IMG/VR virus record: IMGVR_UViG_3300046665_000548
Location: 310,001-374,000 of that record
DNA: 64,000 bases
Strand: one strand, 5' to 3'
Positions within the stretch are counted from its first letter, which is position 1. Each line of letters begins with the position of its first letter. The notes beneath the pieces were generated by a model, which searched no databases, was not told where the DNA came from, and was given only the letters and a program-made list of their open reading frames with translations. A program made the position numbers and the translations under genes. Below are positions 14,261 to 64,000 of this stretch, piece by piece.

Positions 14261-17200
14261 GTGACTACATTTGATTCCACCAGGAAAGACTCGGGCATAA
14301 CGCTGTCGAACGGTGATCTCACCGCGTCTAGCGTTACAGATGCTCCTTTGTATGTATTTGGAACAACTGGCAAGAGCACTGGAAAATTCAGCTTCACGGT
14401 ATCTACTCCTAACGGTTTTGATAACAATACATTCAGATTGTATCTTAGTAACCTTCCTTCATCCGGGGCTGCTCCAGCAGCCGGATATCTTGAAATCTAT
14501 CGTTCGGGTTCTGTCTGGGTCATAAACGACACCAATGGTACTAACAATAATTTCGGTGGAAACGCTCCATCATCCAATCCAGACATTCTAACAGTTCACG
14601 TCGATATTACTGCTCGTAAGGTCTACTTCAGTCTTAACGGCGGAGCATATTTCAATAGTGCTGATCCAGTAGCTGGTACTGGAGGATTTTCGATTCCAGG
14701 TACTGGTGATATCTATCCAGCAGCGCGTTTGAGTGCTTCAATATCCGTTAACGTCACTATAAATTTTTTCCCAACGAGTCTTCCATCTGGGTTCAGTTCT
14801 TGGGATGCTCCCAGCATTCAATCAGCCGATGGCACTTCTTCTGGAACTGGTGCTGCCTCTGGTGTAGGCGTAGCTCTAACTGGGACTCGTTTCGATCCAC
14901 TCAAGACAGAAACTGGTCTAACTCTCTCTAATAATGACCTTACTGTTTCGGGAACGGGTGGTGCCGGAAACTACACTTGGAGTACCACTGCCAAAACTAC
15001 TGGAAAATATAGTTTTGAAATTACATCAAGTTATTTCTACACTTCTGATCTTGTCATTTATTTGGATCAGCAATCGGGAGCATCAGCGCAACCGGGTCAG
15101 TTTACTGATGCTGGTGTGCGACTCACTTATCTTGATCCTATCATTCCCGGTTGGGGATGGAACGCTCGTGACACATCTTCAACCAATTTTTTCGATACCT
15201 CGCATCCAATAACAAACGGTTCTACTAATACCGTTCGTGTTCACGTCGATTTTACCGCCAGAAAAATATATTACGAAGTAAACGGTTCGCTTCTATACGG
15301 TGCTGATCCGGTTGCTGGTACCGGTGGTATATCAATGACTACAGTGGGTACACATAAACTGTGTATGGCTGTTAGTATTCAAGCTCATCCATCATCTGCT
15401 ACCGTTAATTTTAATCCAACATCTCTTCCATCTGGTTATACGGGATGGGATTATGTTCACAATTATCAATCAGGTGTCGGCACTGCCGCAGGCGTAGGTA
15501 CGGCAACTGGCAACGGTACAGCAGTCATATTGAGTAGAAGCACTTTCGACTCAGTCAAGACAGATGCTGGTCTTGTTCTCTCAAATGGTAATCGTACCGT
15601 TGCTGGGCCAGGAAATCTTGGCTCTCTCTATACGTGGAGTACAACAAGTAAATCTACCGGCAAATATAGTTTTGCTTTTACATCGAACAATTTTTACAGT
15701 TCTGACGTTCGAATTTGGATAGATGCTCAAGTTGGAACGAACTTACCAAATCAAAATGCGAACGGTGGTGTACGTCTTATTTACATCGATCCTTCGGCTG
15801 GTGGTCAGGGCTGGGGTGTTGTTAGCACGGTTCCTGCGAACACTTACGATGGGTTACATGCCATTTCGGCTAACACGTCATATACTATTCGTGTTCATGC
15901 CGATTTCACGGCTGACCGAGTATATTTCGAATTAAATGGTTCATATCTTTTTGGCGGCGATCCAGTAGCAGGTACTGGTGGCATAGTCATGAGTCCGGCT
16001 GCCGTCCAAAAAATATGTATAATGGTAGACGCGGTTGGCCCAAATCCTACTGGTGGATCAATTGACTTTGCTCCAACATCACTCCCTTCTGGATTTACTG
16101 CATGGGATGAAACACTTGGCACATCTGCTGGTACGTCAACGGCATCCGCTGTTGGTGCCGTAGCACCGCGTGGTGATGCCGCTGGCACGTCAACCGTATC
16201 TGGAGTCGGCGTCGCCTATCGACCCACACTTAAATTCTCTGCTGCGAACTCAGCAACCGCAACGACCGTAAGTATTCCGACTCACGAAGTCGGTGACTTG
16301 ATCGTGATCTACGCGATGCGTGAGAACGCTACGCCGCCAACACTTGCATCTGGCTTCACGAGCATCACGACTAACACTACAACGTTATTTGGCAGCATCT
16401 TAGGCTATCGTATTGCCACGGCCACTAATACAACATCCGGTACATGGACGAACGCACAAGAACTTATAGTCCATGTCTACAAACCACGAACCGGTGGTGC
16501 TATTCGTATCGGCAGCAGCGTTGTTGCGGTCGGTACCAGCACAACCCTGTCATGGTCTGCATTGACTCCACAGCGCACCAATAGCACGTCGTGGATTGCT
16601 GCATTCGGCGGTCATCGTTCCATTAACACGACATTGGAATCGCCACCTACCGGAATGGTCCTGCGAAATAATCTGGTAGATTCGCTCGCAGAAGTAGCCA
16701 GCTTCGATACGAATGGTGCTGTCAATTCGTTTGCCCTGTCAACAAAGACACCGGGCGGTACTGCTTCTGGTTGGGGTACAATCGTTGTTGAAATTCAAGA
16801 CCTTGCACAAATCATGCAAGGCAGTGCTTCTGGCGCAGGTTCAGCAACAGCAGTAGGTAACGCTGTAGGCATCATAACTGGTGTAGGTAATGCAACTGGC
16901 AATTCTACTGTAACTGCTTCTCCTAATATCTCTCGTCGCGTAACCTCATTCCCTGGAACGAACCCTGCATCATTCAATGGAGTAGCAACCAATAGTGATG
17001 GTTCGATCATGTATGCTGCACCATACAATGATTGTATTCTAAAGTCAGTCAATTACGGCGTTACATGGACTCAGCTTGCCGGTACATCGAATTTTTGGCA
17101 GGGCGTTGCTACATCTCATAGTGGCCAAGTTGTTGCAGCAATGGTACCCGGTGGAAGCATCTGGGTATCAACCGATTATGGTGCATCATGGACTGAAGCA

Positions 17201-20200
17201 ACATCTGCTGGCTCACATTACTGGCTTTCAATTGAAGTATCTGGCGATGGATCAACTATCATCGCTGGTGATGCTGATACAGGTGGCCGTGTATATGTAT
17301 CACACAACTCAGGTACGACGTTCACTGCTGTTGCAGGCTCGCATCCATGGCTTGGAGTTGCTTCATCATCTACCGGCTCTGTACTATATGCAGTCGGGGA
17401 TACGGGCAACTACGTTCAGAAATCGACAAATGGTGGTACGAGTTGGTCTTCACTGACAGCAGGACCAACCGGCTGGAATGGCGTCGATTGCTCTAGCGAC
17501 GGTCAGACAGTCGTTATCATCGGGTCAGGTAATGCGGCTAAGGTATCGACAAATGGCGGTACCTCGTGGGCTGATTGCCCAACTAGCGGTTCATTCAATA
17601 ACTGGAGCAACATCAGTGTATCCGACACTGGCCAATATATCGTACTTGCTGATAATACCGACTATATCTGGTTCTCTAGCAATTACGGTACTTCGTTTGT
17701 CAAGCAGAATCAGCCAGGATTCGGTCAACGTATTTGGATATCTGTGGACATCTCTTCAGATGGACAGTGGATCATTGCTGGCGAGTATGATGATGGTAGT
17801 GGCAAGGGCCAGATATATGTAATCAACTACTCTCGTCCCGTCTACGCATCTGGTTCTGGCACATCTAGCGGTATTGGCACAGCGGCTGCCGTTGGTAAAC
17901 CAATGTCGATTGGTCCGGCAGTTGTCTATGGCGCGACACTTGCCACCAACGATACGAACGTTAATATGTCGTTTCGCGTTGTTGCTACAGTTGTTGAAGC
18001 ATCAGATGGGCATCTTCGCATAACTTTTCAGTCTGGTTCAGGAGGTACCCTCGGTATTTCTCATGCCTCATTTGGCAAGTGGGATACTAATACTGGCTCA
18101 GCGGATACAACGGGAACACCTATCAAACTGACGTTTGGCGGGGCTGATACGTTCCAGATGAGCGGAACGGTTACCTCTGATTACGTCAATCACTCAGCAT
18201 CGTTCTCGCTCGTTCCTGGCGAAAAGATCGTCGTCATTTACGATACCACTTCATTTGGCGATGAACGCTATAGTGGTTCACTATCGGGTGTTGAAACGTG
18301 GTTCAAGGTTGGTACTTCATGGAGTACCCCGAACGTAACCGGATTCACAAAGCTTGCAGCGACCAACTATTCCGTTATAGCAATTGAATCAGTTAAGAGC
18401 TTTGAAATTCTACCATACGCTGGACCTACAGTTCGTTCAGTATCTAACACTGCGTATGTTAGTACGAGCAGCTTAGTTCTTAACAAGCCTACGGGAACCG
18501 TAGATGGCGATATTATGATCGCTCATACGTTTTCTGGCGTTGATTTCTATAACGACGGAACGTTCACTGCACCAGCAGGATGGACGTTGCTGACTGGTTT
18601 TCCGACAGCGGTAGACGTAAGTAACTTCTACGGTAAAATGTTTGTGTACTGGAAGCGAGCTTCTAGTGAAGGAAGCTCATACACCTTTACACAGAATAGA
18701 GACTTTTATACTCAGGGTGAAATCATCACGATCCAGGGCGCTGTTGCATCTGGTGATCCGATTGATGTTATCGGAATAGCTACAGGTCTTAGCCAGACAA
18801 GTGTCGTTAGCTCGGTCACCACTTCTGCTGATAACGAACTCGTATTGTATTTGTCGCACGACTGGGAAGGTAATGGAGCATTATCTCCTCCCGCTGGCTT
18901 TACTGAGATTTTAGACGGTCTTATCTATTCAGCATCTCGCCAACTTTCATACGCTTCAGCAACGGGTTCCGTAGCACAAGTTAACGGTAATCTCGGCGCA
19001 GGTGCTCCATTCGCCGCGTCTCTAATCGCGATTGAACCAGCCATCGCCAGTGTATCTGCTAACATCACCGTATCAGGCATCGTTGCCAACAGCGCGGTGG
19101 GCTCTCCGACACAAATCGGAATCAGTTATACCGCTGTCTCTGGAGTTACGGCTGGAACAGCGATTTCGGCACCGACAACGCAAGGCACGGCTAATAAGAG
19201 CATAACTGGCGTCTCTGCTGCCACACAAATTGGCACGGTTTCGACTATCGGCAGCGCTAACAAGGCACTGTCTGGTGTTTCGGCATCGAGCGCTGTCGGC
19301 GTTGCCACTGACAGGACGACAAGCAACGTAGCAGTTTCGGGCGTAGCAGGATCGTCTGTAATAAGCAGCGTGACTACTATTGGCCGCGCAGTTGTCTCTG
19401 CTTCTGGTGTGCAGGCATCAACGGCGGTCGGGATTGTCGCTAAAATTGGCAATGCAAACATCCTTGCGCCATCTACGACCGGTACGGGTCAGGTGGGAGG
19501 AACAGTTAATTCTGGCACGTCAAATGTAGCGCTGTCCGGAGTAAGCGCCGCATCGGCAATTGGCACGACAACAAACATTGGAAATGGAAACGTCCTTGCG
19601 ACCTCGGCGTCCGGCTCCGCTGATGTTGGAGTCGCTACCGGGGTTGGGACGACCACAGCTAGCATTGTAATTTCAGGAGTTTCTGGAACAGCAACTGCAA
19701 ACGCTGCTACAATTGGCTCAACGAACAACATTTCACTGTCGGGTGCTTCCGCAGCGACCTCCGTTGGAAGCACCACTGAGAGTGGTTCTAACAACGTCAA
19801 TATCTCCAGCACGACCGCATCAACCTTCGTCGGTTCTCCAAATGTGGGCGGGCAATCGGCTGCGGTAAGTGGGGGCGTTTCGGCGTCAACGTCATCTGGC
19901 ACGACATCCATCTCCAGCAGCGCTAATGTGCCTATTTCTGGGGCTAACGCGGCCGGTGCGGTTGGATCGCCTACGAAAATCGGATCGGCAAATGTTGCGA
20001 TTACATCAGTATCCGCCAGTGGTCAGGCCCAAACGCTTACCGGTATCGGTTCGGTTCAAATCGCCGCTACTGGTGTTCAAGGCGCAACAAGTAGTGGATC
20101 GCCAACTGTTTCGGGTGAAGCGTTTGTAGCGATTTCCGGTGCCTCGGCTAGCGTTGTTGCACAATCAAATACGGTAACGACGACTGCATCTGCGACGGTG

Positions 20201-22702
20201 ATCGGTGTTGTCGCCGGAACGTCTGCGGGCACAACTAACAAGACGACCACTTCCTTTACATCCGTCAACGGCGTCACGGCATCCATAAACGCAGGACAGC
20301 CTGCCAATATCGGCAACGCTTCGGCGGCAATCGTGGGCGTCTCTGGTAGCAGCGCGGCTTCGCCAGTCATAGTTGCCTCAGCGATCAATACCGGAGCGTC
20401 TGTCGTCGGTGTTAGTGGCACCGGAAGTACGGGCGCGACCACCGTCAGCACACAATCATCTGCTTCTATCGCGGGTATTCAAGGAAATGGTGTAGCTGGG
20501 TCTCCTAATGCGACTGGCTTTGCTATCACGCCTGTCGTCGGCGTATCCTCCAGTGCAGTCAGTGGTACTACTACTGAGAGCGGATCAGCTAACGTTCAAA
20601 TCACGGGAGCCTCGGCTAATGCTCTTTCAGGAGCGCTTACCGAGACAGGTTCTAGCTATGTCAATCTGACTGGTGTTTCGGCATCCGGCGTCAGCAGAAC
20701 AACAAGCGTTACGGGATCATCGAGCATTGGCATCACTGGTGTCCAAACAAGCTCTTCGGTTGGAACCACAACAGAGACATTTTCCGCCAACGTATCGCTC
20801 ACGAGCGCGAGCGCACAGGGTCTTGTTGGAACTACGGAACAAGCCGCAGGAACTGTTTTCAGACTCGAAGATGGCGTTGTAGCAAATGGTCAGGCTGGAT
20901 TGCCATCCGTCATTGGTCACGGAACGATTACTATCAACGGTGCATCTGCTACCGCGTATACCGGCACAACAGGAGAAATTACGGCGTCTTCGGCATCGGT
21001 CGCGGGCGTTGCAACGACTGGTATCGCTGGTTCTGTCGGTATCGTCGGCCGAGCCGTCGTTGATCTTCAGGGCGCAAGCGCAACTGCCCAAACTAGCAAC
21101 GCTCCAGTCAGCGTCACGTCATTCACTTCGATCTCGGGTGAGAGCGCAACTGCCCAGATCGGTATTGTTACTATCGGAAATATCGGAATTACGCTTGTCG
21201 ATCCACAGGGGGTAAACGCCTCGGGTAATGTTGGCGTGACGATTCCTTCCATCACGTCTAGCACGAATATTTCCGGCACAAGTGCTTCGACCCAGGTAGG
21301 AATCACAGATCAAAAGGTTTATGCCAACGTATCTCTATTGGGTACGTCAGCATCGTCGTCCGTTGGAAACGTGATCCCAGCGATACAGACCACTCTAACG
21401 GGCGTTTCATCCTCTGGTCAGGTTGGAACTTCTACTGTATCGAGTTCGTCCGCCGCATCGATCCTTGGTGTTCAGAGCGCTGGCGCGGTTCGTCCAATCA
21501 CTGGGGTTGGTAGCTTCAACACTACGATCTCTGGAGTCGAAGCAAACGGCTCGACAAATGATCTAGTCGTTCTCAGTACGGCGAATAGCACCATTGTCGG
21601 GGCCAGCGCCGCAGGTCTTGTTACTGGCCCGACCGTCACCGGCAACGCAGCTACAAACGTCTCTGGGGTCTCCGCAGCAGCTTCGGCGGGCATTGCAGCG
21701 TCTCGCGCCAACACATCGGTGGTAGCGGATGGCGTCCAGGCCACAGTTATTGCCGGTTCGCCTATAGAAAACGGCGATGCGAACGTACTGGCATTGGGAG
21801 TAGCCGCGAACTCACTCGTTGGTAATTCAGATGTAAATGGCGACACGTGGGTTTCGCTCACAGGTATCTCGGCTTCTGGCCAGATCAATTCAACCTCGGT
21901 TCGGGCCGATGCGGATAGCATCATTTCTGGCGTAAGTGGTTCCGGTCAAGTATCTGACGCGACCATTAATTCCGCAACGTACGCTGATATATTTGGAGTA
22001 TCCGCACAGACTGATACGGAAAACCTCACCGCAAGGCGAGACGCCATCGCGGTTCCCATCCAGGGCGTAGCGGGTGGCGGCACTGTTTCAAACGTATCAC
22101 CGGCTATCGCCAAGCTGGTTTCTGGTGTCGTGGCGACGGGTGTTGCAGATGCCGTCTACGCAGGACGAACCAGCAATAGTTCGATTGGCAACTTTGGCTC
22201 ATCCGCTGCTGGAAAGTCCAATACCCGCCCCGGTATGCACCGGTATGTTCAAAATGCCAGACCATATTATGACCATCTGAAGCCTCGTTTGCCGCGCTAT
22301 CGCATTCCGGCATCGCAGATGGTCGTGATGGAGTTTGTCGTTCCGACAGGCGGAAAAACCAAGCTGTTTCTGGTTCACACCGGCAAGGCACAGGACTATT
22401 CCGCTCAGGCATGGATCAGCGCGGAACCAGACGGGCGGCCGGTAACGTCAACGACCAATATGAGCGAAAAATGGTTTCCTAACCGGCGTGCGATCAATCC
22501 TGTCATAGTTTTTGATCAAGCCATTTCGACCCCTCATGGATTGACTGTCGGACTGCCCCCAGGACGCTATTTTCTCAATATTCTCAACGTCTCCAACGAA
22601 CCAAATGAGGTTGGTTTTTGGTTAGAAACTGGTATTGTGGTTCTTAGCGGGGCATCAGCCGGAACCGCCGTAGGACAGACATTTCAGTTGACCATTTCGT
22701 AA
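14261..22702 (+). CDS. Giant multidomain fibre/adhesin (2813 aa): 3 SPRY/ConA-like domains, BNR-repeat beta-propeller, 22-aa-repeat stalk, shared C-terminal domain
   Basis: Three copies of FD..K..G.TLSN.D.T...TGKYSF...DPVAGTGG...PTSLPSG..W; Asp-box-like S.(D/N).G.(S/T)W repeats; (S/T)GV.A....G every 22 aa from about 19050 to 22190. Confidence 0.85.
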   Translation: MTTFDSTRKDSGITLSNGDLTASSVTDAPLYVFGTTGKSTGKFSFTVSTPNGFDNNTFRLYLSNLPSSGAAPAAGYLEIYRSGSVWVINDTNGTNNNFGGNAPSSNPDILTVHVDITARKVYFSLNGGAYFNSADPVAGTGGFSIPGTGDIYPAARLSASISVNVTINFFPTSLPSGFSSWDAPSIQSADGTSSGTGAASGVGVALTGTRFDPLKTETGLTLSNNDLTVSGTGGAGNYTWSTTAKTTGKYSFEITSSYFYTSDLVIYLDQQSGASAQPGQFTDAGVRLTYLDPIIPGWGWNARDTSSTNFFDTSHPITNGSTNTVRVHVDFTARKIYYEVNGSLLYGADPVAGTGGISMTTVGTHKLCMAVSIQAHPSSATVNFNPTSLPSGYTGWDYVHNYQSGVGTAAGVGTATGNGTAVILSRSTFDSVKTDAGLVLSNGNRTVAGPGNLGSLYTWSTTSKSTGKYSFAFTSNNFYSSDVRIWIDAQVGTNLPNQNANGGVRLIYIDPSAGGQGWGVVSTVPANTYDGLHAISANTSYTIRVHADFTADRVYFELNGSYLFGGDPVAGTGGIVMSPAAVQKICIMVDAVGPNPTGGSIDFAPTSLPSGFTAWDETLGTSAGTSTASAVGAVAPRGDAAGTSTVSGVGVAYRPTLKFSAANSATATTVSIPTHEVGDLIVIYAMRENATPPTLASGFTSITTNTTTLFGSILGYRIATATNTTSGTWTNAQELIVHVYKPRTGGAIRIGSSVVAVGTSTTLSWSALTPQRTNSTSWIAAFGGHRSINTTLESPPTGMVLRNNLVDSLAEVASFDTNGAVNSFALSTKTPGGTASGWGTIVVEIQDLAQIMQGSASGAGSATAVGNAVGIITGVGNATGNSTVTASPNISRRVTSFPGTNPASFNGVATNSDGSIMYAAPYNDCILKSVNYGVTWTQLAGTSNFWQGVATSHSGQVVAAMVPGGSIWVSTDYGASWTEATSAGSHYWLSIEVSGDGSTIIAGDADTGGRVYVSHNSGTTFTAVAGSHPWLGVASSSTGSVLYAVGDTGNYVQKSTNGGTSWSSLTAGPTGWNGVDCSSDGQTVVIIGSGNAAKVSTNGGTSWADCPTSGSFNNWSNISVSDTGQYIVLADNTDYIWFSSNYGTSFVKQNQPGFGQRIWISVDISSDGQWIIAGEYDDGSGKGQIYVINYSRPVYASGSGTSSGIGTAAAVGKPMSIGPAVVYGATLATNDTNVNMSFRVVATVVEASDGHLRITFQSGSGGTLGISHASFGKWDTNTGSADTTGTPIKLTFGGADTFQMSGTVTSDYVNHSASFSLVPGEKIVVIYDTTSFGDERYSGSLSGVETWFKVGTSWSTPNVTGFTKLAATNYSVIAIESVKSFEILPYAGPTVRSVSNTAYVSTSSLVLNKPTGTVDGDIMIAHTFSGVDFYNDGTFTAPAGWTLLTGFPTAVDVSNFYGKMFVYWKRASSEGSSYTFTQNRDFYTQGEIITIQGAVASGDPIDVIGIATGLSQTSVVSSVTTSADNELVLYLSHDWEGNGALSPPAGFTEILDGLIYSASRQLSYASATGSVAQVNGNLGAGAPFAASLIAIEPAIASVSANITVSGIVANSAVGSPTQIGISYTAVSGVTAGTAISAPTTQGTANKSITGVSAATQIGTVSTIGSANKALSGVSASSAVGVATDRTTSNVAVSGVAGSSVISSVTTIGRAVVSASGVQASTAVGIVAKIGNANILAPSTTGTGQVGGTVNSGTSNVALSGVSAASAIGTTTNIGNGNVLATSASGSADVGVATGVGTTTASIVISGVSGTATANAATIGSTNNISLSGASAATSVGSTTESGSNNVNISSTTASTFVGSPNVGGQSAAVSGGVSASTSSGTTSISSSANVPISGANAAGAVGSPTKIGSANVAITSVSASGQAQTLTGIGSVQIAATGVQGATSSGSPTVSGEAFVAISGASASVVAQSNTVTTTASATVIGVVAGTSAGTTNKTTTSFTSVNGVTASINAGQPANIGNASAAIVGVSGSSAASPVIVASAINTGASVVGVSGTGSTGATTVSTQSSASIAGIQGNGVAGSPNATGFAITPVVGVSSSAVSGTTTESGSANVQITGASANALSGALTETGSSYVNLTGVSASGVSRTTSVTGSSSIGITGVQTSSSVGTTTETFSANVSLTSASAQGLVGTTEQAAGTVFRLEDGVVANGQAGLPSVIGHGTITINGASATAYTGTTGEITASSASVAGVATTGIAGSVGIVGRAVVDLQGASATAQTSNAPVSVTSFTSISGESATAQIGIVTIGNIGITLVDPQGVNASGNVGVTIPSITSSTNISGTSASTQVGITDQKVYANVSLLGTSASSSVGNVIPAIQTTLTGVSSSGQVGTSTVSSSSAASILGVQSAGAVRPITGVGSFNTTISGVEANGSTNDLVVLSTANSTIVGASAAGLVTGPTVTGNAATNVSGVSAAASAGIAASRANTSVVADGVQATVIAGSPIENGDANVLALGVAANSLVGNSDVNGDTWVSLTGISASGQINSTSVRADADSIISGVSGSGQVSDATINSATYADIFGVSAQTDTENLTARRDAIAVPIQGVAGGGTVSNVSPAIAKLVSGVVATGVADAVYAGRTSNSSIGNFGSSAAGKSNTRPGMHRYVQNARPYYDHLKPRLPRYRIPASQMVVMEFVVPTGGKTKLFLVHTGKAQDYSAQAWISAEPDGRPVTSTTNMSEKWFPNRRAINPVIVFDQAISTPHGLTVGLPPGRYFLNILNVSNEPNEVGFWLETGIVVLSGASAGTAVGQTFQLTIS

Positions 22703-25431: not shown

Positions 25432-25757
25432 TGTTGATTCAGTCGTACGATACCATGTATGGGCCGGAGCAGCGAGGCAATCGCTGGCTCGTGAATCAAC
25501 GATATTATCGCTATCGCGTCGAGACGGATACGATATTTGAGGACAATGAGCAGTGGCGGAAAGAAATAGACGCCCGTGAAGAATGGGCCGAACAACAATT
25601 GTCTCATACTAGACGCCGAAATAAAGGCAAGCTCATCAACAGCGTGTATGACGAGTCTGATTGGTCCATCTTGGTGGACTACGAAGCCATATGGCACCTC
25701 TGGTGGTATTTCATGAACGAGAATGATGCGCTGCTCTACAAGCTTCGTTGGGGCTAG
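25431..25757 (+). CDS. Hypothetical protein, 'FKLRWG' family
   Basis: Ends YFMNENDALLYKLRWG. Confidence 0.7.
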   Translation: MLIQSYDTMYGPEQRGNRWLVNQRYYRYRVETDTIFEDNEQWRKEIDAREEWAEQQLSHTRRRNKGKLINSVYDESDWSILVDYEAIWHLWWYFMNENDALLYKLRWG

Positions 25758-26398
25758 CTGAGAACGAAGGCGTCGATAGCATCAATGGCCTCTTCAATGC
25801 TTATTTCAAACCATTCTCCCGTTCCTCGCCGGTTGCCAAATTGGAGATGCAGCTTAGCTTCTACTTGTTTTCTCAAAGGAAAAAACTTGTAGTGGTTATA
25901 TTCGAATGAAGCGTGCGGATCACCGGTTTGATAACCTGCCAGTCTAGATTGTAAATCAGTTGTCGATCCGATCTTTACCCATCCAGGAAAAGCTGGATTA
26001 GTCATCACATAGACAAAACCTTTCTCGTTGCGCGTGATACCAAACGCCGGACCTTTATTCTCGACGGCGATTTCCTGCCGTAACCGCAATTGCTTGCTTT
26101 GTTGCTTACGTGAATATGCTTTCTCCCGAGCAGCGGGGCGCTGCTCTCTCTCGATTTGTCGCTGGTTTTTGCGTTCAGCATTTGCGTTCTCTGTTGCAAA
26201 TGCTCTATCGAACTTCCTACTCTGCGCCGCTAACACAAATGCATTGCGCGATCTAAAGTAAATTCCGATATAGGTTCGCAAATCTGCGAACTCGATGAGT
26301 TGTAATCCTCTTGCAACTCTACATTCGTTCAGAACGTCACACGCCGACCTCAAAGAAGCATCGGACGGCTCACGTGACGAAGTTTCTAAAAAATTCAC
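25754..26398 (-). CDS. GIY-YIG superfamily (T5orf172-like) nuclease-domain protein
   Basis: GFVYVMTNPAFPGWVKIGST..L..RL..YQTGDP...E..LH......GEWF. Confidence 0.8.
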   Translation of the reverse strand: MNFLETSSREPSDASLRSACDVLNECRVARGLQLIEFADLRTYIGIYFRSRNAFVLAAQSRKFDRAFATENANAERKNQRQIEREQRPAAREKAYSRKQQSKQLRLRQEIAVENKGPAFGITRNEKGFVYVMTNPAFPGWVKIGSTTDLQSRLAGYQTGDPHASFEYNHYKFFPLRKQVEAKLHLQFGNRRGTGEWFEISIEEAIDAIDAFVLS

Positions 26399-26452: not shown

Positions 26453-27440
26453 AGTTTGGAACGATAAGCCGGGCAACCGGTGAATTGGGGTAAACCCCAC
26501 ATAACCCCTACCCAGTGTCTAGTATGGTTCGCCCAGCTAGATGATGGACAGCCCAAACAACCCCGCATCTTCACATCTCATGCTGGATGTGAGCTTCTGA
26601 GCCGACCTACACAGGAAGGACAGGAGATGTGGCTGAACGGTAGGATTAGGTCTGGAGGCATCCAGAAGAGAATGCAGCCTCTGCGAAAGCATGGCGGTTC
26701 TAACAATGGCGTCGCAGTCATTGACCTGAATGCGAACCTACAAGAAGCCTATGAGTGAACGGGAAGTCGGGTTTGTTCGAGGCTTAGCGGCTAAGGGCGA
26801 CCGGCAGTTCGATGGGTTGTGTCTCTAGGAATAGAGGCGTGATCCGAGGGTGTTGATGAAAGTCATGCCCGTGAACGCCCAAGTAGTGCTAGCAGCATGA
26901 AAAGGATGAGGCGTGTTGTATTTTGATTCTCGAAAGAGAGTTGAAGCAGCAGGGACAGCACGTCTTGGTGGTTTCGCATAGCTCAGTAGTAGAGCAACAC
27001 CCAATCCAGGTGTCGGTCTCTGGTTGCGATACCAGATACGATAAACAAAAAGCGAAAGTCTGTCCCGGCTGTATGTGAAAGATGTCTAATGCCGAGCCCT
27101 GGCAAGGGAACTCGGTCTCCCGGAGGTCGCAAGCCGAAGGTGAGTTGATAGAGAAGGTTTCATAACGAGGTAGCCCTCGTGAACGGCTCGCAAGGTCGGT
27201 GGAGCAAGAACTGTTGAGTGACATGCAGCGACACGAGAACTGCCTCTCGTGCTGTTGGTCCGATGAAGCCGAACCTCGCAAGGGTTTGGTGGAGTACCAA
27301 CGAGCAAGAATGGCGACATTGGCTGGATACCTGTCGAGGGCGCAAGCTCCGGTGGGTGGATAACCGGGGAAAGCTGGCCGCAAGTCAGTCATAATCCCGA
27401 AAGACCGGTCGTGAAAACGAGTAATCTCATCGTTTCGAAA
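26453..27440 (+). ncRNA. Large ornate ncRNA, GOLLD-like
   Basis: No credible CDS over ~1 kb; many GNRA-capped hairpins (GCAA, GAAA, GTAA); embedded tRNA-like domain; GCGTGTTGTATT and 3' GAGTAATCTCA segments resemble GOLLD RNA from memory; ends at a terminator. Boundaries approximate. Confidence 0.7.
26972..27044 (+). pseudogene. Degenerate tRNA-like domain inside the large ncRNA
   Basis: TA-GCTC-AGTAGTA-GAGC D arm; ACACC/GGTGT stem with loop CAATCCA (no U33); TCTGG/CCAGA stem with 8-nt loop TTGCGATA; two acceptor-stem mismatches; no CCA. Confidence 0.65.
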
Positions 27441-27443
27441 AAA

Positions 27444-27470
27444 CCCTCGCGAAAGCGGGGGATTTTTTTT
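27444..27470 (+). terminator. Terminator of the large ncRNA
   Basis: CCCTCGC-GAAA-GCGGGGG followed by A and T8. Confidence 0.8.
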
Positions 27471-27483
27471 AGGAATTACACCA

Positions 27484-27726
27484 ATGGATGCTTTGGAATT
27501 ATTTTGTCATCGCGTGTGGATCACCGTAGGCAATACTGACGAGCTTCATTCATGGCTCGTGGAGAACATGGGCGAACCGTTTTATCGCGATCAAGATGAA
27601 GACTTGATGGTCGGTAAGAGATGGTCGATCATGACGCCTATCTGGGGTTGCCGGAACATCGCTAACTTGCGAGTGCATTTTGCGGATCAACGAGACGCGA
27701 TGCTGTTCAAGTTGAGATGGGGCTGA
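27484..27726 (+). CDS. 'FKLRWG' family protein (tandem duplicate 1)
   Basis: LHSWLVENMGEPFYR...LRVHFADQRDAMLFKLRWG. Confidence 0.75.
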   Translation: MDALELFCHRVWITVGNTDELHSWLVENMGEPFYRDQDEDLMVGKRWSIMTPIWGCRNIANLRVHFADQRDAMLFKLRWG

Positions 27727-27732
27727 CCCCAA

Positions 27733-27981
27733 ATGGATTACATAAACCATTCAAAACAATTTCCTTACTACGTATGGACGAGAACATACGACATAGACGG
27801 CTTGCATTCTTGGCTGATCGACAACTTAGGCGAGCCGTTCTATCGCGAGAGTGATTCGGTCGCATTGATGGTTGATAAAAGATGGTCAATTCTATCTCCT
27901 ATCGGTCGCAACATTGCAGCACTGCGTGTTCATTTCGCAGATGCTAATGATGCTCTCCTCTTTAAGTTGAGATGGGGCTGA
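27733..27981 (+). CDS. 'FKLRWG' family protein (tandem duplicate 2)
   Basis: LHSWLIDNLGEPFYR...LRVHFADANDALLFKLRWG; 3' end GTTGAGATGGGGCTGAC identical to the previous gene. Confidence 0.75.
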   Translation: MDYINHSKQFPYYVWTRTYDIDGLHSWLIDNLGEPFYRESDSVALMVDKRWSILSPIGRNIAALRVHFADANDALLFKLRWG

Positions 27982-28049
27982 CATCTATAAAAGACCTCGT
28001 ACGAGCGAGGTCTTTATGCTATGCGAGTGGATCATCATCAGAGGCAATC

Positions 28050-28196
28050 ATGTATCGTCGCAAACTTCTTCTTGAAGCCATCGATACCCAGGACGGGCGG
28101 CGGATATACTCCGTTGATGTCGGTGATCTTCCATTTGAAAAAGCCAAACAGTACATCGATCAGATAATCAGGACGAAAAATGTCTCTGACCAATAA
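28050..28196 (+). CDS. 48-aa protein resembling the portal (gp20) stem/clip segment
   Basis: GAGG RBS; MYRRKLLLEAI...RRIYSVDVGDLPFEKAKQYIDQI aligns with the window's portal YKQKELLEDAI...RRIFYIDVGNMPPVRAKAHIQAI. Confidence 0.6.
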   Translation: MYRRKLLLEAIDTQDGRRIYSVDVGDLPFEKAKQYIDQIIRTKNVSDQ

Positions 28197-28386
28197 CCAG
28201 AAGAGCATAGTCGCTCTCATGAAGCGCAGCACCATTCAAGCAGATGGATGGTATCGCGTAAGCGATATGATGTGGCCGGTGATTTCCGGCAAGCTACCCG
28301 ACGAACTAGTTGATGAGCGTAAAAACGATGACGGTGGATTTATTCGATTCACCGCCCAAGGAGAAATCGTAGCAAAGTATCTTTAA
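28180..28386 (+). CDS. Hypothetical protein
   Basis: AGGA RBS; coupled ORF. Confidence 0.6.
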   Translation: MSLTNNQKSIVALMKRSTIQADGWYRVSDMMWPVISGKLPDELVDERKNDDGGFIRFTAQGEIVAKYL

Positions 28387-28393
28387 CGGCGCG

Positions 28394-28690
28394 ATGAAAA
28401 ATGGGAGAGGCTTAATGATCATCAAAAATCGACCCGATTGGTGGAGACTTGCTTCGAAGACTGTTCCTCATCTGAAGAGATTTGGCGCTCAGAATGGAGT
28501 GTATTTCGATGAATCTGCGGCGATTGGATGTTTGAACCCCGCCGCAGATCGCGATCTCCATAAGTTGCTCTGCGATTTCTTGCGAGAGTTGCCCCACAAT
28601 CAGCTAGAGAAGACGTTCCCGTTCGATGATCTCTGTGATCTGTGCTCCGAACATGATCGCGTTTTCCAGACGGAGATGGAGCCGGGTTAA
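28394..28690 (+). CDS. Hypothetical protein
   Basis: ORF in a packed co-directional run; start may be the second Met. Confidence 0.55.
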   Translation: MKNGRGLMIIKNRPDWWRLASKTVPHLKRFGAQNGVYFDESAAIGCLNPAADRDLHKLLCDFLRELPHNQLEKTFPFDDLCDLCSEHDRVFQTEMEPG

Positions 28691-28692
28691 GC

Positions 28693-28887
28693 ATGGCAGG
28701 CGAAGTAATCTACGTTGATTTTTCGAAGAATGGTCTCAGCTTCGAAGATCGGATGTCTATTGCCCTGCACGAGTGGATAGCGTCCCATCCGTACGGGGTT
28801 TCGCCTGAAGACATGAAAGCTGAGATTGCCCGGCTAATGAAAAACCCTGGCTCATCGAGCCGACCAACAGGAGATACGAATGAATAG
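28693..28887 (+). CDS. Hypothetical protein
   Basis: Coupled ORF starting MAGEVIYVDF. Confidence 0.55.
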   Translation: MAGEVIYVDFSKNGLSFEDRMSIALHEWIASHPYGVSPEDMKAEIARLMKNPGSSSRPTGDTNE

Positions 28888-29167
28888 ACGCGAGCTATTA
28901 GGTGCAGCACTGACGACCGGGGCAGCAACAGTAATCGGTGTGAGCGCAGCGAATGCGGCGTCGTCCGTAGAGCCGGATGGCTGGATGATGCGCAGCAAGG
29001 ACTATTGCAAGATCATTCCGGACGGCGAGCTAGAGCGTTGGAAATTCAATTGGAAATATCTACTGTTGGATGGACGAGCAGAGATCGTTCCTTTGTACAA
29101 GGGCGACGCTGTGCCGAGAGAGCAGCTAACATTTGCTTCATTGGAGGAAATGAATAGGATGCTTTAG
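28880..29167 (+). CDS. Small protein with twin-arginine (Tat)-like signal peptide
   Basis: MNRRELLGAALTTGAATVIGVSAANAA; AGGAG RBS. Confidence 0.65.
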   Translation: MNRRELLGAALTTGAATVIGVSAANAASSVEPDGWMMRSKDYCKIIPDGELERWKFNWKYLLLDGRAEIVPLYKGDAVPREQLTFASLEEMNRML

Positions 29168-33309: not shown

Positions 33310-33393
33310 TGGCCGGTGCCCGGAATGGTATCGGAGCAGATTGTTAATCTGTCGAGGGAAACCTCATTGCAGGTTCGAGTCCTGCCCGGTCAG
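33310..33393 (+). tRNA. Non-canonical tRNA with GTT (Asn) anticodon and long variable arm
   Basis: Acceptor TGGCCGG/CCGGTCA, G73; D stem CCG/CGG; anticodon arm GCAGA-TTGTTAA-TCTGT; variable arm GAGG-GAAA-CCTC; T arm GCAGG-TTCGAGT-CCTGC; followed by CCT, not CCA. Confidence 0.8.
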
Positions 33394-33418
33394 CCTGACG
33401 ATCAAAGCGTAGTAGTAT

Positions 33419-33493
33419 TCCTGGGTAGCTCAGCGGCAGAGCGTTCGACTGTTAATCGAATGGTCGCAGGTTCGATCCCTGCCCCAGGAGCCA
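33419..33493 (+). tRNA. tRNA-Asn(GTT)
   Basis: Canonical cloverleaf TCCTGGG/CCCAGGA, TTCGA-CTGTTAA-TCGAA, U1-A72, G73, encoded CCA. Confidence 0.95.
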
Positions 33494-62528: not shown

Positions 62529-64000
62529 TTAGCCCATCGCCGGTCCGCCGCCCGGTGGGGGCGGAGGAGCGGGAGCGCCGCCCGGAGCAGGAGGAGGAGC
62601 ACCACCGGCAGCGGCAGGATCGCCACCCGGATCAGGCATTGCGGTTTCATCCGGCATTCCGAAATCATCCATTCCGCCGCCAGAGCGCATACCAATGGCA
62701 CCCAGATCGGCTGCATTGTCGCTCTCGGCCGGGGTTGTGCCGGACACCTTCTTAAGCTTGGATGCGTTTTCTTCCTTCCATAGCGTTTCGTTCTCAAGCA
62801 ATTCTTCCTCAGTGAGGTTCAAGAAACGCTTGAGTTTGAAGCGCTCGGCCAGCTTCTTGTTCTCCGCGACCATCTGATAAACCGAAGCCTGAGCGGCATC
62901 GAGTTCGATCTGACGATACTTGGTGAAGTTCTGAGGAGGATTGAACTGAAGCTCGTACAGGTTGGAATCAACACTCACGCCGTTTTCACGTACGAAGCGT
63001 TTGAATTCCGCGTCGAATACTGGAGCCAACAGGGACTGCATTCGCATGCAATACTTGTTGAAACGGAACTCCTGGATCAGCGCAGCGCCGAGCTTGCCGT
63101 CGCTATATGCAACGTTGTTGCCGTCATCCTCACCGAGGGACAGATAGCTGGACGGAATACGAAGGCCGCGAGCCATCTTCTTAGTGAAGAAACTCAGATC
63201 GCCAATCTCTCCCAGATTGTCACCGCCAGCAAGCGTCTCAACCTTGGAGCCGCGACCTTCGGCTGATTGCGCGAAGAAATAGTCTTCCATGATGCTGAGC
63301 GGATTGTAGGCCGCGTCGAGAATGGAAGAACCACCACCGGTACGGTTTGGAATGCGGCGCTGATGAATTTCGTTCTTGATCGCCTGGATGTGAGCCTTGG
63401 CGCGAACGGGAGGCATATTTCCGACATCGATGTAGAAAATTCGGCGTTCAGGAGCGCGCTGAACTCGGTAGATGATAATAGCGTCTTCGAGCAATTCTTT
63501 CTGCTTGTACGTCTTGAAGATAGGCTCAAGGATCGAGGCACCGAATGGCCAGTTGATGTCCATGCCGACTGAAAGAGACAAATGCACCATGTGGTCGGCA
63601 TTCACGATCTGAACATCATCGACGCTCTGAGTTTGTCCAGGACGGTTTTGACGCTGATCGATGTGGGCTCCAGCCATCTGGAAGGAACCGCCCGTCACGC
63701 CCGCGCCGGAACGTGAGCCATAGGCATTGCTGCTACCAAGCGGAGTGAGACCGAACTGTGATGTATCGACCTTGTTCGTTGCGAACTTTGCTTGACGGTT
63801 CAGATCGAGACCACGAAGTAGATATTCGTCAGCTACCTTGCCGCGCTCTTCGTCTACTTTCACCATGAGAACAGAGTAGTGATCCACCCATAGCCATTCA
63901 AATGTCTCGGGGTCACGTAAGAAGAAGGCATCTCCGTTCTTGATGCAGGACCTGAACATGTACCAGAGACGTGACTTGAAATCGTTCAAGCGAACCCACT
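62529..64000 (-). CDS. gp20: Portal protein (gp20-like), 5' end outside window
   Basis: LEDAIIIYR..RAPERRIFYIDVG, EDYFF....GRGS.VETL.GG.NLGEI.D, L.IP.S.L, E.RF.K. Confidence 0.95.
   Translation of the reverse strand, partial: WVRLNDFKSRLWYMFRSCIKNGDAFFLRDPETFEWLWVDHYSVLMVKVDEERGKVADEYLLRGLDLNRQAKFATNKVDTSQFGLTPLGSSNAYGSRSGAGVTGGSFQMAGAHIDQRQNRPGQTQSVDDVQIVNADHMVHLSLSVGMDINWPFGASILEPIFKTYKQKELLEDAIIIYRVQRAPERRIFYIDVGNMPPVRAKAHIQAIKNEIHQRRIPNRTGGGSSILDAAYNPLSIMEDYFFAQSAEGRGSKVETLAGGDNLGEIGDLSFFTKKMARGLRIPSSYLSLGEDDGNNVAYSDGKLGAALIQEFRFNKYCMRMQSLLAPVFDAEFKRFVRENGVSVDSNLYELQFNPPQNFTKYRQIELDAAQASVYQMVAENKKLAERFKLKRFLNLTEEELLENETLWKEENASKLKKVSGTTPAESDNAADLGAIGMRSGGGMDDFGMPDETAMPDPGGDPAAAGGAPPPAPGGAPAPPPPPGGGPAMG

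What the first reader, a model, noticed from the sequence alone, without database searches (positions are those of the whole stretch)
28050..28196. 48-aa mini-protein mimicking the portal stem/clip segment
Seen: MYRRKLLLEAI-DTQDG-RRIYSVDVGDLPFEKAKQYIDQI versus this phage's portal (about 63360-63509) YKQKELLEDAI-IIYRVQRAPE-RRIFYIDVGNMPPVRAKAHIQAI. It has its own RBS and sits 35 kb from the portal among small accessory genes. Established: this gp20 segment forms the clip that contacts terminase, and portals are recognised by bacterial Avs4-type sensors. Inference: a decoy that blocks portal-sensing immunity, or an inhibitor of packaging by competing phages.
Basis: partly seen in the sequence, partly recalled or inferred. 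Interest (0 to 1): 0.7.

Follow-up and report, generated by a model that had tools for sequence, protein, structure and literature searches.

The report
Stand-alone mini copy of portal clip
A 608-kb phage carries a 48-codon gene copying the part of its portal protein where the DNA-packaging motor docks; it may work as a competitive mimic, and similar stand-alone genes occur in other phages, but it is not shown that this one is translated.

Summary
Window 28050-28196 (+) is an intact 48-codon ORF with a GAGG Shine-Dalgarno site. It resembles T4-type portals only: own portal BLASTP E 7e-6, portal profile E 1.7e-6.

By alignment to T4 gp20 it covers the end of stem helix alpha5, clip strand beta1, the tip turn and helix alpha6. 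That includes all of gp20 288-311, a peptide reported to bind terminase gp17 and block packaging.

It is not alone. The same genome has a second gene ("mini2", outside the window) that is a whole stand-alone clip domain. Mini2 has syntenic homologues with dN/dS about 0.11. An exhaustive search found 41 related proteins; those read are short single or tandem modules. At least five other uncultured phages carry mini1-like "half clips".

Mini1 itself has no orthologue, but its neighbour gene has none either. The source's gene caller did not call it, its codon score is weak, and an antisense frame scores higher.

Best reading (about 0.35): a portal-derived microprotein that competes for a clip partner, most likely the large terminase. 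An immune decoy, a portal-assembly cap or a dead relic remain open. No function was tested.

The parts
28050..28196 (+). Mini1 ORF, 48 aa (P0001). Residues 2-10 resemble the end of portal stem helix alpha5. Residues 17-24 are clip strand beta1, 25-28 the tip turn (G-D-L-P), and 29-46 helix alpha6.
28040..28044 (+). Shine-Dalgarno-like AGAGG, 5 nt upstream of the ATG.
   Evidence: genome-wide SD frequency
27990..28015 (+). 11-bp hairpin in the 68-nt gap between the upstream gene's stop and mini1. It has no clear U tract, so it may be a weak terminator or an RNA stability element.
   Evidence: not picked up by the terminator scan
28180..28386 (+). Downstream 68-aa ORF whose start overlaps the mini1 stop by 17 nt. 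It has a good codon score and no known family.
27733..27981 (+). Upstream 82-aa gene, called by the source annotation. It is a paralogue of 27484-27726 and has no relatives in public collections.
28038..28235 (-). Antisense 65-aa ORF fully overlapping mini1. Its codon-model score is higher, but it has no SD and collides with the + gene at 28180. It is treated as a shadow frame (rival).
63378..63509 (-). Portal segment homologous to mini1: end of stem alpha5, clip beta1, tip G-N-M-P and start of alpha6.
62529..64000 (-). Portal gene (Portal_T4, E 9e-82). The C-terminal 489 aa lie in the window; the full gene is 601 aa.

Best explanation
Mini1 is a translated microprotein derived from a T4-type portal gene. 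It keeps only the last turns of stem helix alpha5, clip strand beta1, the protruding tip turn and helix alpha6. This is the surface that the portal shows outside the capsid and that the large terminase (TerL) docks on. As a soluble monomer it would compete with portal rings for a clip-binding partner. The most likely partner is TerL, of this phage or of a co-infecting T4-type phage, so that motor docking is blocked or delayed.

Shown: the homology, the domain mapping, the intact ORF and SD, the existence of analogous and fuller stand-alone clip genes, and purifying selection on the fuller one.

Inferred: that mini1 is translated, that it folds, that it binds TerL, and which phage's terminase it acts on.
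For: 1. Mapping. phmmer against solved T4 gp20 aligns mini1 11-42 with gp20 276-307, so mini1 23-46 equals gp20 288-311. PMC4493910 reports that a 24-aa peptide of exactly 288-311 binds gp17 and inhibits packaging. It also places the tip residues N291, M292, R295 and K296 at the gp17 interface.

2. Pattern of retention. Mini1 keeps the R-R, D-x-G, [ML]-P, K-A and Y positions of beta1, tip and alpha6. It has lost flanks that are invariant in portals. The stand-alone clip family keeps the same core.

3. Recurrence. The same genome has mini2, a whole clip domain (AF2 pLDDT 85.6, beta-alpha-beta-beta). The family profile matches the portal clip profile at probability 97.9, E 5.6e-13, over 62 columns. 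Mini2 has syntenic homologues with dN/dS 0.11. There are 41 significant relatives among 1.84 billion representatives; the 39 read by sequence are short single or tandem modules, not portals, and 2 long multi-stretch hits were not read.

4. Independent half clips. P0035, P0052, P0055, P0096 and P0070 have mini1's architecture. The four whose contexts were looked up sit among non-portal genes.

5. Gene-like setting. There is a GAGG SD (about 4-fold enriched at real starts) and a stop that overlaps the next start. With mini1 counted as a gene, a 198-nt hole in a tightly packed same-strand array is filled.

6. AF2 gives a beta-hairpin plus helix at pLDDT 70.6. This would be a self-contained scaffold that presents the tip.
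Against: - No orthologue of mini1 was found in IMG/VR, in JGI metagenomes or in 5.8 billion proteins.
- It is absent from the complete relatives of 578 and 561 kb.
- Neither the 48- nor the 74-aa form was called by the source's gene caller.
- The codon-model score is -1.2 per 147 nt. The antisense frame scores +7.0.
- The tip differs from T4 at two of the four contact residues (D for N291, E for R295).
- There are no expression data: metatranscriptome contigs stop at 27437.
- Some family members carry Tat-like signals, which does not fit a cytoplasmic terminase target for the whole family.
Confidence: 0.35

Rival explanations
1. Immune decoy or antagonist. The mini-protein occupies the portal-binding pocket of a host STAND sensor (Avs4 or Avs11 type), or another portal sensor, without triggering oligomerisation. 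This would mask the real portal.
For: Portals are direct triggers of Avs4 and Avs11 (PMC13581612). Stand-alone clip genes sit next to replication and nucleotide-metabolism genes (sliding clamp, 5'-3' exonuclease, MazG) rather than in head operons. That fits production before the portal, which a decoy would need.
Against: Avs sensors are described as enveloping the conserved core through extended interfaces, so a 48-aa piece covers little of such a surface. I could not read the Avs4-portal structure paper, so it is unverified that the clip is the contacted part. The host and its defences are unknown.
Confidence: 0.15
2. Portal-directed action. Strand beta1 of mini1 pairs with the beta2-beta3 hairpin of a portal subunit, as the neighbouring subunit's beta1 does in the dodecamer. 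This would cap or poison ring assembly, of a rival phage or as a chaperone-like brake on its own.
For: The clip beta-sheet is the only main-chain to main-chain contact between gp20 subunits. It is built from one strand of one subunit and two strands of the next (PMC4493910). Mini1 has beta1 but no beta2-beta3.
Against: AF2 pairs beta1 with mini1's own N-terminal strand, and mini2 closes on itself. Both point to a self-contained monomer rather than an open strand. There is no experimental precedent.
Confidence: 0.12
3. Non-functional relic. Mini1 is a leftover piece of a captured portal gene, or of a clip-family gene that lost beta2-beta3. It stays open by chance and is not translated to any purpose.
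For: No orthologue was found. It was not called by the source annotation. The codon score is weak. It lacks the beta2-beta3 half found in the aligned members of the conserved family.
Against: The ORF begins and ends with the homologous block and has an SD. No portal-like remnants survive in any flanking frame. At 36% identity a neutral 48-codon frame would stay open only about one time in ten (my estimate). The retained residues are those kept by the selected stand-alone family. The same truncated architecture recurs in other phages. Lack of relatives is a property of the locus: the neighbour gene has none.
Confidence: 0.25
4. The real gene is the antisense 65-aa ORF (28038-28235, minus strand), and the portal likeness on the plus strand is a fossil.
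For: The antisense frame scores +7.0 per 147 nt against -1.2 for mini1. Only about 4% of true-gene windows show this inversion.
Against: It has no SD. It points against a uniformly plus-strand array and overlaps the well-scoring gene at 28180 by 56 nt. It is not in the protein collection. Antisense shadow frames commonly stay open.
Confidence: 0.05
5. Chance similarity of a short ORF to the most conserved portal motif.
For: Each database hit is weak on its own, and the Pfam score is below the gathering threshold.
Against: Independent statistics agree: 7e-6, 1.7e-6, 5.8e-8, and genome-wide 0.003 to 0.0005. The match is collinear over stem helix, strand, turn and helix.
Confidence: 0.03

Closest known systems
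T4 gp20 clip peptide 288-311, the synthetic gp17-binding packaging inhibitor cited in PMC4493910
   Same: Mini1 residues 23-46 align with it residue for residue. It has the same strand-end, tip turn and helix alpha6, and keeps D288, G290, P293, K296 and A297.
   Different: Mini1 is a natural, separately encoded gene product with about 22 extra N-terminal residues. The tip reads D-L instead of N-M, and E replaces R295. Binding to any terminase is untested.
Stand-alone clip-domain proteins (alignment A5; PHROG phrog_23805 and phrog_12349, function unknown)
   Same: They share the beta1, tip and alpha6 core (hhalign probability 94.7, E 5.8e-8; phrog_23805 E 3e-4). They are phage-borne, small, and lie outside head operons.
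   Different: The 23 aligned family members carry beta2-beta3 and lack the stem-helix piece. Mini1 is the reverse, which points to a separate origin directly from a portal gene.
T4-type portal protein (Pfam PF07230)
   Same: It is the sequence source of the segment, and the only family hit in Pfam and PDB.
   Different: Mini1 is 48 aa against about 600 aa. It has no wing, crown, tunnel loop or second stem helix, so it cannot form a portal.
MicroProteins and dominant-negative truncated paralogues; phage packaging-interference proteins such as SaPI Ppi (from my own knowledge, not checked here)
   Same: The concept is the same: a small protein that copies one interaction surface of a larger one and titrates its partner. 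Ppi blocks helper-phage packaging by binding a terminase subunit.
   Different: There is no sequence relation. Ppi binds the small terminase and comes from a satellite. I know of no described case of a portal-clip mimic.

Membership tests
T4-type portal protein (PF07230) | Full-length architecture of wing, stem, clip and crown, scoring above the Pfam gathering threshold | tested here: not met
   Only residues 17-41 match profile positions 206-230 of 433. The score is 20.7 bits against a cut-off of 22.9. The ORF is 48 aa.
Stand-alone clip-domain family (A5 / phrog_23805) | Core motif of beta1, tip and alpha6 (hydrophobic strand, D-x-G-x-[ML]-P, K-A, Y) | tested here: met
   hhalign probability 94.7, E 5.8e-8. 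A5 profile on the genome: 20.2 bits, E 5e-4. phrog_23805: E 3e-4.
Stand-alone clip-domain family (A5 / phrog_23805) | C-terminal beta2-loop-beta3 hairpin (aromatic-F-I-P-V-R ... R-I-E-x-L) | tested here: not met
   The ORF stops after alpha6. No remnant is found in any forward frame of 27900-28800.
Stand-alone clip-domain family (A5 / phrog_23805) | Conserved orthologues under purifying selection | tested here: inconclusive
   Mini2 against P0058 gives dN/dS 0.11. For mini1 no orthologue exists to test.
gp20 288-311-type terminase-binding peptide | Covers the whole equivalent segment | tested here: met
   Mini1 11-42 aligns with gp20 276-307, so 23-46 equals 288-311.
gp20 288-311-type terminase-binding peptide | Tip contact residues N291, M292, R295 and K296 | tested here: inconclusive
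   Mini1 has D, L, E and K. The phage's own portal has N, M, V and R at these positions. So two are conservative or kept and two are changed.
gp20 288-311-type terminase-binding peptide | Physical binding to the large terminase and inhibition of packaging | not testable with these tools
   Needs biochemistry.
Anti-Avs (portal-sensor) decoy | Binds the sensor domain and suppresses portal-triggered activation | not testable with these tools

The most novel reading that the evidence does not exclude
Phages with T4-type heads have repeatedly cut the clip out of their portal gene and kept it as separate small genes: whole clips, half clips, tandem copies and a MazG fusion. These would act as soluble mimics of the packaging-motor docking site. 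They could sabotage the terminase of co-infecting rivals, or blind host sensors that recognise the portal. Mini1 would be one such weapon.
Probability: 0.3. Interest if true: 0.8.

Novelty: new variant of a known kind. Interest (0 to 1): 0.6.

Why it matters
If these genes are active, they are a natural counterpart of the synthetic gp20 peptide that blocks T4 packaging. That would be a genetically encoded, domain-sized inhibitor or regulator of the portal-terminase contact, a step conserved in all tailed phages and herpesviruses.

It would open a new class of phage-phage conflict or anti-defence genes. It would give structural biologists a soluble handle on the still unresolved clip-TerL interface. 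It would also attach a testable function to protein families now listed as unknown (phrog_23805, phrog_12349).

There is a practical warning too. Many short "portal" proteins in public databases are frameshift artefacts and have to be separated from the genuine stand-alone genes.

Tried and rejected
**Structure and complex prediction**
- Complex prediction of mini1 with this phage's TerL (alignments A6 and A3) returned "no answer". It is evidence neither for nor against binding.
- Foldseek of both models against the PDB gave nothing significant. This is expected: the clip sheet in solved portals is formed between subunits, so a closed monomer does not superpose on a portal chain.
- ESM Atlas searches were uninformative.

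**Searches for orthologues of mini1, all negative**
- Word-indexed protein search.
- IMG/VR and JGI metagenome pattern scans.
- Relatives Phosso and Atu_ph07.
- Five IMG/VR portal relatives and five TerL relatives, including two complete genomes.
- Neighbour-gene scans meant to recover syntenic loci also found nothing.

**Stand-alone copies in cultured phages**
- Five Rak2-like genomes searched whole contain only the portal.
- tblastn with P0003, P0035 and P0069 listed only portal genes; P0052 and P0080 had no match.
- A promising full-length hit in Pseudoalteromonas phage XG4 was simply its portal.

**Other ideas set aside**
- Expression: metatranscriptome contigs cover only the GOLLD RNA upstream.
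- A frameshifted whole clip (mini1 plus the next ORF) was rejected.
- A T4-type late promoter was considered, but TATAAATA is not clearly enriched in this genome.
- Most short Portal_T4 hits (P0004-P0054) were rejected as frameshifted portal genes.

Full report
**Setting**

The window is bases 310001-374000 of a single 607,744-bp IMG/VR virus record. CheckV rates it 100% complete with linear ends. Its portal and large terminase are T4-type. The nearest cultured relatives are the jumbo phages Sinorhizobium phage Phosso and Agrobacterium phage Atu_ph07, with about 50% portal identity. Uncultured relatives of 561-578 kb also exist, with 65-68% TerL identity.

**The observation**

Window 28050-28196 (+) is an intact 48-codon ORF, here called mini1 (P0001). 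The portal lies on the minus strand from 62529 and runs beyond the window end. It is 601 aa in the full genome.

The similarity of mini1 to portals is supported by several independent measures:
- BLASTP against the own portal: 16/44 identities, one 6-residue gap, E 7e-6.
- Mini1 as a tblastn query against the whole genome: the portal is the only hit besides itself, E 0.003.
- Pfam Portal_T4: E 2e-4, 20.7 bits, just below the gathering score.
- hhalign against a profile of 18 portals: probability 89.9, E 1.7e-6, 38 columns.
- tblastn against 50,697 phage records: every listed hit, and the one unannotated hit that was checked, lies in a portal gene.

The match is not chance.

**What piece of the portal it is**

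phmmer against solved structures aligns mini1 11-42 with T4 gp20 276-307. The T4 portal structure paper (PMC4493910) gives these boundaries:
- stem helix alpha5: residues 255-278;

The clip is the docking site of the packaging ATPase gp17 and later of the neck. Tip residues N291, M292, R295 and K296 face gp17, and mutating them abolishes packaging. A 24-residue peptide, 288-311, binds gp17 and inhibits packaging.

Mini1 therefore consists of four parts: a shortened end of alpha5, strand beta1, the tip turn (G-D-L-P where the portal has G-N-M-P), and alpha6. Its residues 23-46 are the exact counterpart of the inhibitory peptide. AF2, run with a five-row alignment, predicts a beta-hairpin (7-12, 18-23) followed by a helix (29-46) at mean pLDDT 70.6. 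This confidence is moderate.

**A second copy and a wider family**

A 65-portal profile was run over all 17,693 six-frame ORFs of the genome. It found two extra hits with E <= 0.01, both on the same profile segment. One was mini1. The other was a 65-aa ORF at genome 468759-468956 on the minus strand, here called mini2 (P0003).

Evidence that mini2 is a real, selected gene:
- It follows a MazG-like gene with an ATGA overlap, and the source annotation calls it.
- AF2 folds it as beta-alpha-beta-beta at pLDDT 85.6.
- It has homologues in other contigs with MazG directly upstream, two of them (P0058, P0056) with the longer downstream synteny as well.
- dN/dS against P0058 is about 0.11, with dS near saturation.

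An exhaustive HMMER search with the three-member family profile covered 1.84 billion representatives. It returned 41 proteins at E <= 1e-3. The 39 read by sequence fall into these groups; two long multi-stretch hits were not read:
- most are 57-86 aa single modules or 103-236 aa proteins with one or two modules;
- one is a MazG-clip fusion (P0074);
- three have Tat-like signal peptides.

A 23-member alignment matches the portal clip profile over 62 columns spanning beta1, alpha6, beta2 and beta3, at probability 97.9 and E 5.6e-13. Pfam has no family of its own for these proteins: 16 of 23 hit only Portal_T4. PHROGs holds two unknown-function families that match them, phrog_23805 and phrog_12349.

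So stand-alone clip domains are a real, selected and uncharacterised kind of phage gene.

**Where mini1 stands in this**

Mini1 matches the family core at probability 94.7 and E 5.8e-8. Genome-wide with the family profile it scores E 5e-4. It differs from the family in two ways:
- it lacks beta2-beta3, and nothing portal-like survives downstream in any frame;
- it has the stem-helix piece that the family lacks.

It is thus a separate derivative of a portal gene. The same "half clip" architecture recurs in other uncultured phages. P0035, P0052, P0055 and P0096 each lie among non-portal genes, such as NADAR, rotamase, 5'-3' exonuclease and DNA polymerase. P0070 has the same architecture by sequence, but its context was not looked up.

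The residues mini1 retains are those of the beta1, tip and alpha6 core that the stand-alone family also conserves. Flanks that are invariant in portals are lost. This pattern fits shared constraint better than uniform decay.

**Is mini1 a gene?**

For:
- The intact frame is coextensive with the homology.
- A GAGG lies 5 nt before the ATG. A core SD precedes 29% of long-ORF starts against 7.5% of all ATGs.
- The stop overlaps the next start by 17 nt.
- It fills what would otherwise be a 198-nt hole in an array whose gaps are mostly under 10 nt.

Against:
- Neither the 48- nor the 74-aa form is in the protein collection, so the source pipeline did not call it.
- The codon-model score is -1.2 per 147 nt. 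Local small genes range from -2.5 to 8.5, and held-out genes average 5.6.
- The antisense frame scores +7.0. An inversion like this occurs in about 4% of true-gene windows. That antisense ORF has no SD and collides with the next plus-strand gene.
- No orthologue exists in any collection searched. However, scans for both flanking genes found no relatives either, so this absence is a property of the locus, not of mini1.
- No expression data exist. Soil and rhizosphere metatranscriptome contigs cover only the RNA gene upstream.

**Mechanism**

The only experimentally grounded lead is the T4 peptide result. This segment on its own binds the large terminase and blocks packaging. I therefore rank a competitive clip mimic that targets TerL first, at about 0.35.

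Whether the target would be the phage's own motor (timing control) or that of a co-infecting T4-type phage (interference) cannot be told. The altered tip (D-L, E-K against the own portal's N-M, V-R) would fit either.

Family members whose contexts were read sit beside replication and nucleotide-metabolism genes. This suggests expression before head genes, which also suits an immune decoy against portal sensors such as Avs4 or Avs11, ranked at about 0.15. A portal-capping role through the inter-subunit beta-sheet is ranked at about 0.12. A dead relic is ranked at about 0.25.

The Tat-like signals on some family members warn that the family is not functionally uniform.

**Novelty and score**

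The similarity itself is ordinary homology. What I did not find described, in the papers read or in Pfam, PHROGs or NCBI-derived annotations, is a separately encoded portal clip. These genes form a conserved family, and this genome carries two different versions.

I rate it a new variant of a known kind (domain-derived microproteins, packaging interference). Interest is 0.6. This is held down by the unproven translation of mini1 and the absence of any functional test.

Noticed in passing
window 26908-27433 (+): A complete GOLLD RNA (Rfam RF02032, 188 bits, gathering score 150, E 2.4e-52) lies about 600 nt upstream of mini1 and is followed by a strong terminator at 27444-27461. Near-identical contigs occur in soil and rhizosphere metatranscriptome runs. 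They cover only 26500-27437.
   Followed up: partly
G000:C1:468759-468956 (minus strand; L087:2759-2956), outside the window: Mini2 is a 65-aa stand-alone whole clip domain placed right after a MazG-like gene with an ATGA overlap. MazG adjacency recurs in three other contigs, and one protein (P0074) is a MazG-clip fusion. This suggests a functional link between the two.
   Followed up: partly
proteins P0064, P0067, P0068, P0071, P0075, P0076, P0078, P0081, P0082, P0084, P0087, P0091, P0094, P0097, P0101: Many relatives carry two clip modules in tandem. P0068, P0091 and P0101 start with twin-arginine (Tat-like) signal sequences, which hints at export and does not fit a purely cytoplasmic role.
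   Followed up: no
window 28038-28235 (-): An antisense 65-aa ORF over mini1 scores better in the genome's codon model than mini1 itself (+7.0 against -1.2 per 147 nt) but has no SD.
   Followed up: partly
window 27484-27726 and 27733-27981 (+): Two adjacent paralogous small genes (63% identity) have no relatives in the IMG/VR or JGI metagenome scans and no family hit.
   Followed up: partly
window 28880-29167 (+): A 95-aa ORF begins with a twin-arginine-like signal (M-N-R-R-E-L-L followed by a hydrophobic stretch). It has no family hit.
   Followed up: no
window 25754-26398 (-): A T5orf172 / MUG113 (GIY-YIG-like) domain protein lies just upstream of the GOLLD RNA on the opposite strand.
   Followed up: no
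window 33310-33493 (+): Two adjacent tRNA-Asn (GTT) genes.
   Followed up: no
window 14261-22702 (+): A 2,813-aa ORF that was not examined.
   Followed up: no
proteins P0004-P0054 (public collections): Most short proteins carrying a Portal_T4 hit are portal genes broken by frameshifts: the canonical portal sequence followed by an out-of-frame tail. They are probably assembly errors and would contaminate any census of stand-alone clip genes.
   Followed up: yes
L121, L122, L152, L161, L165 (TerL loci of relatives): In several related contigs the TerL match spans 2.0-2.2 kb instead of 1.6 kb. This suggests insertions (intein or intron) in the terminase gene.
   Followed up: no
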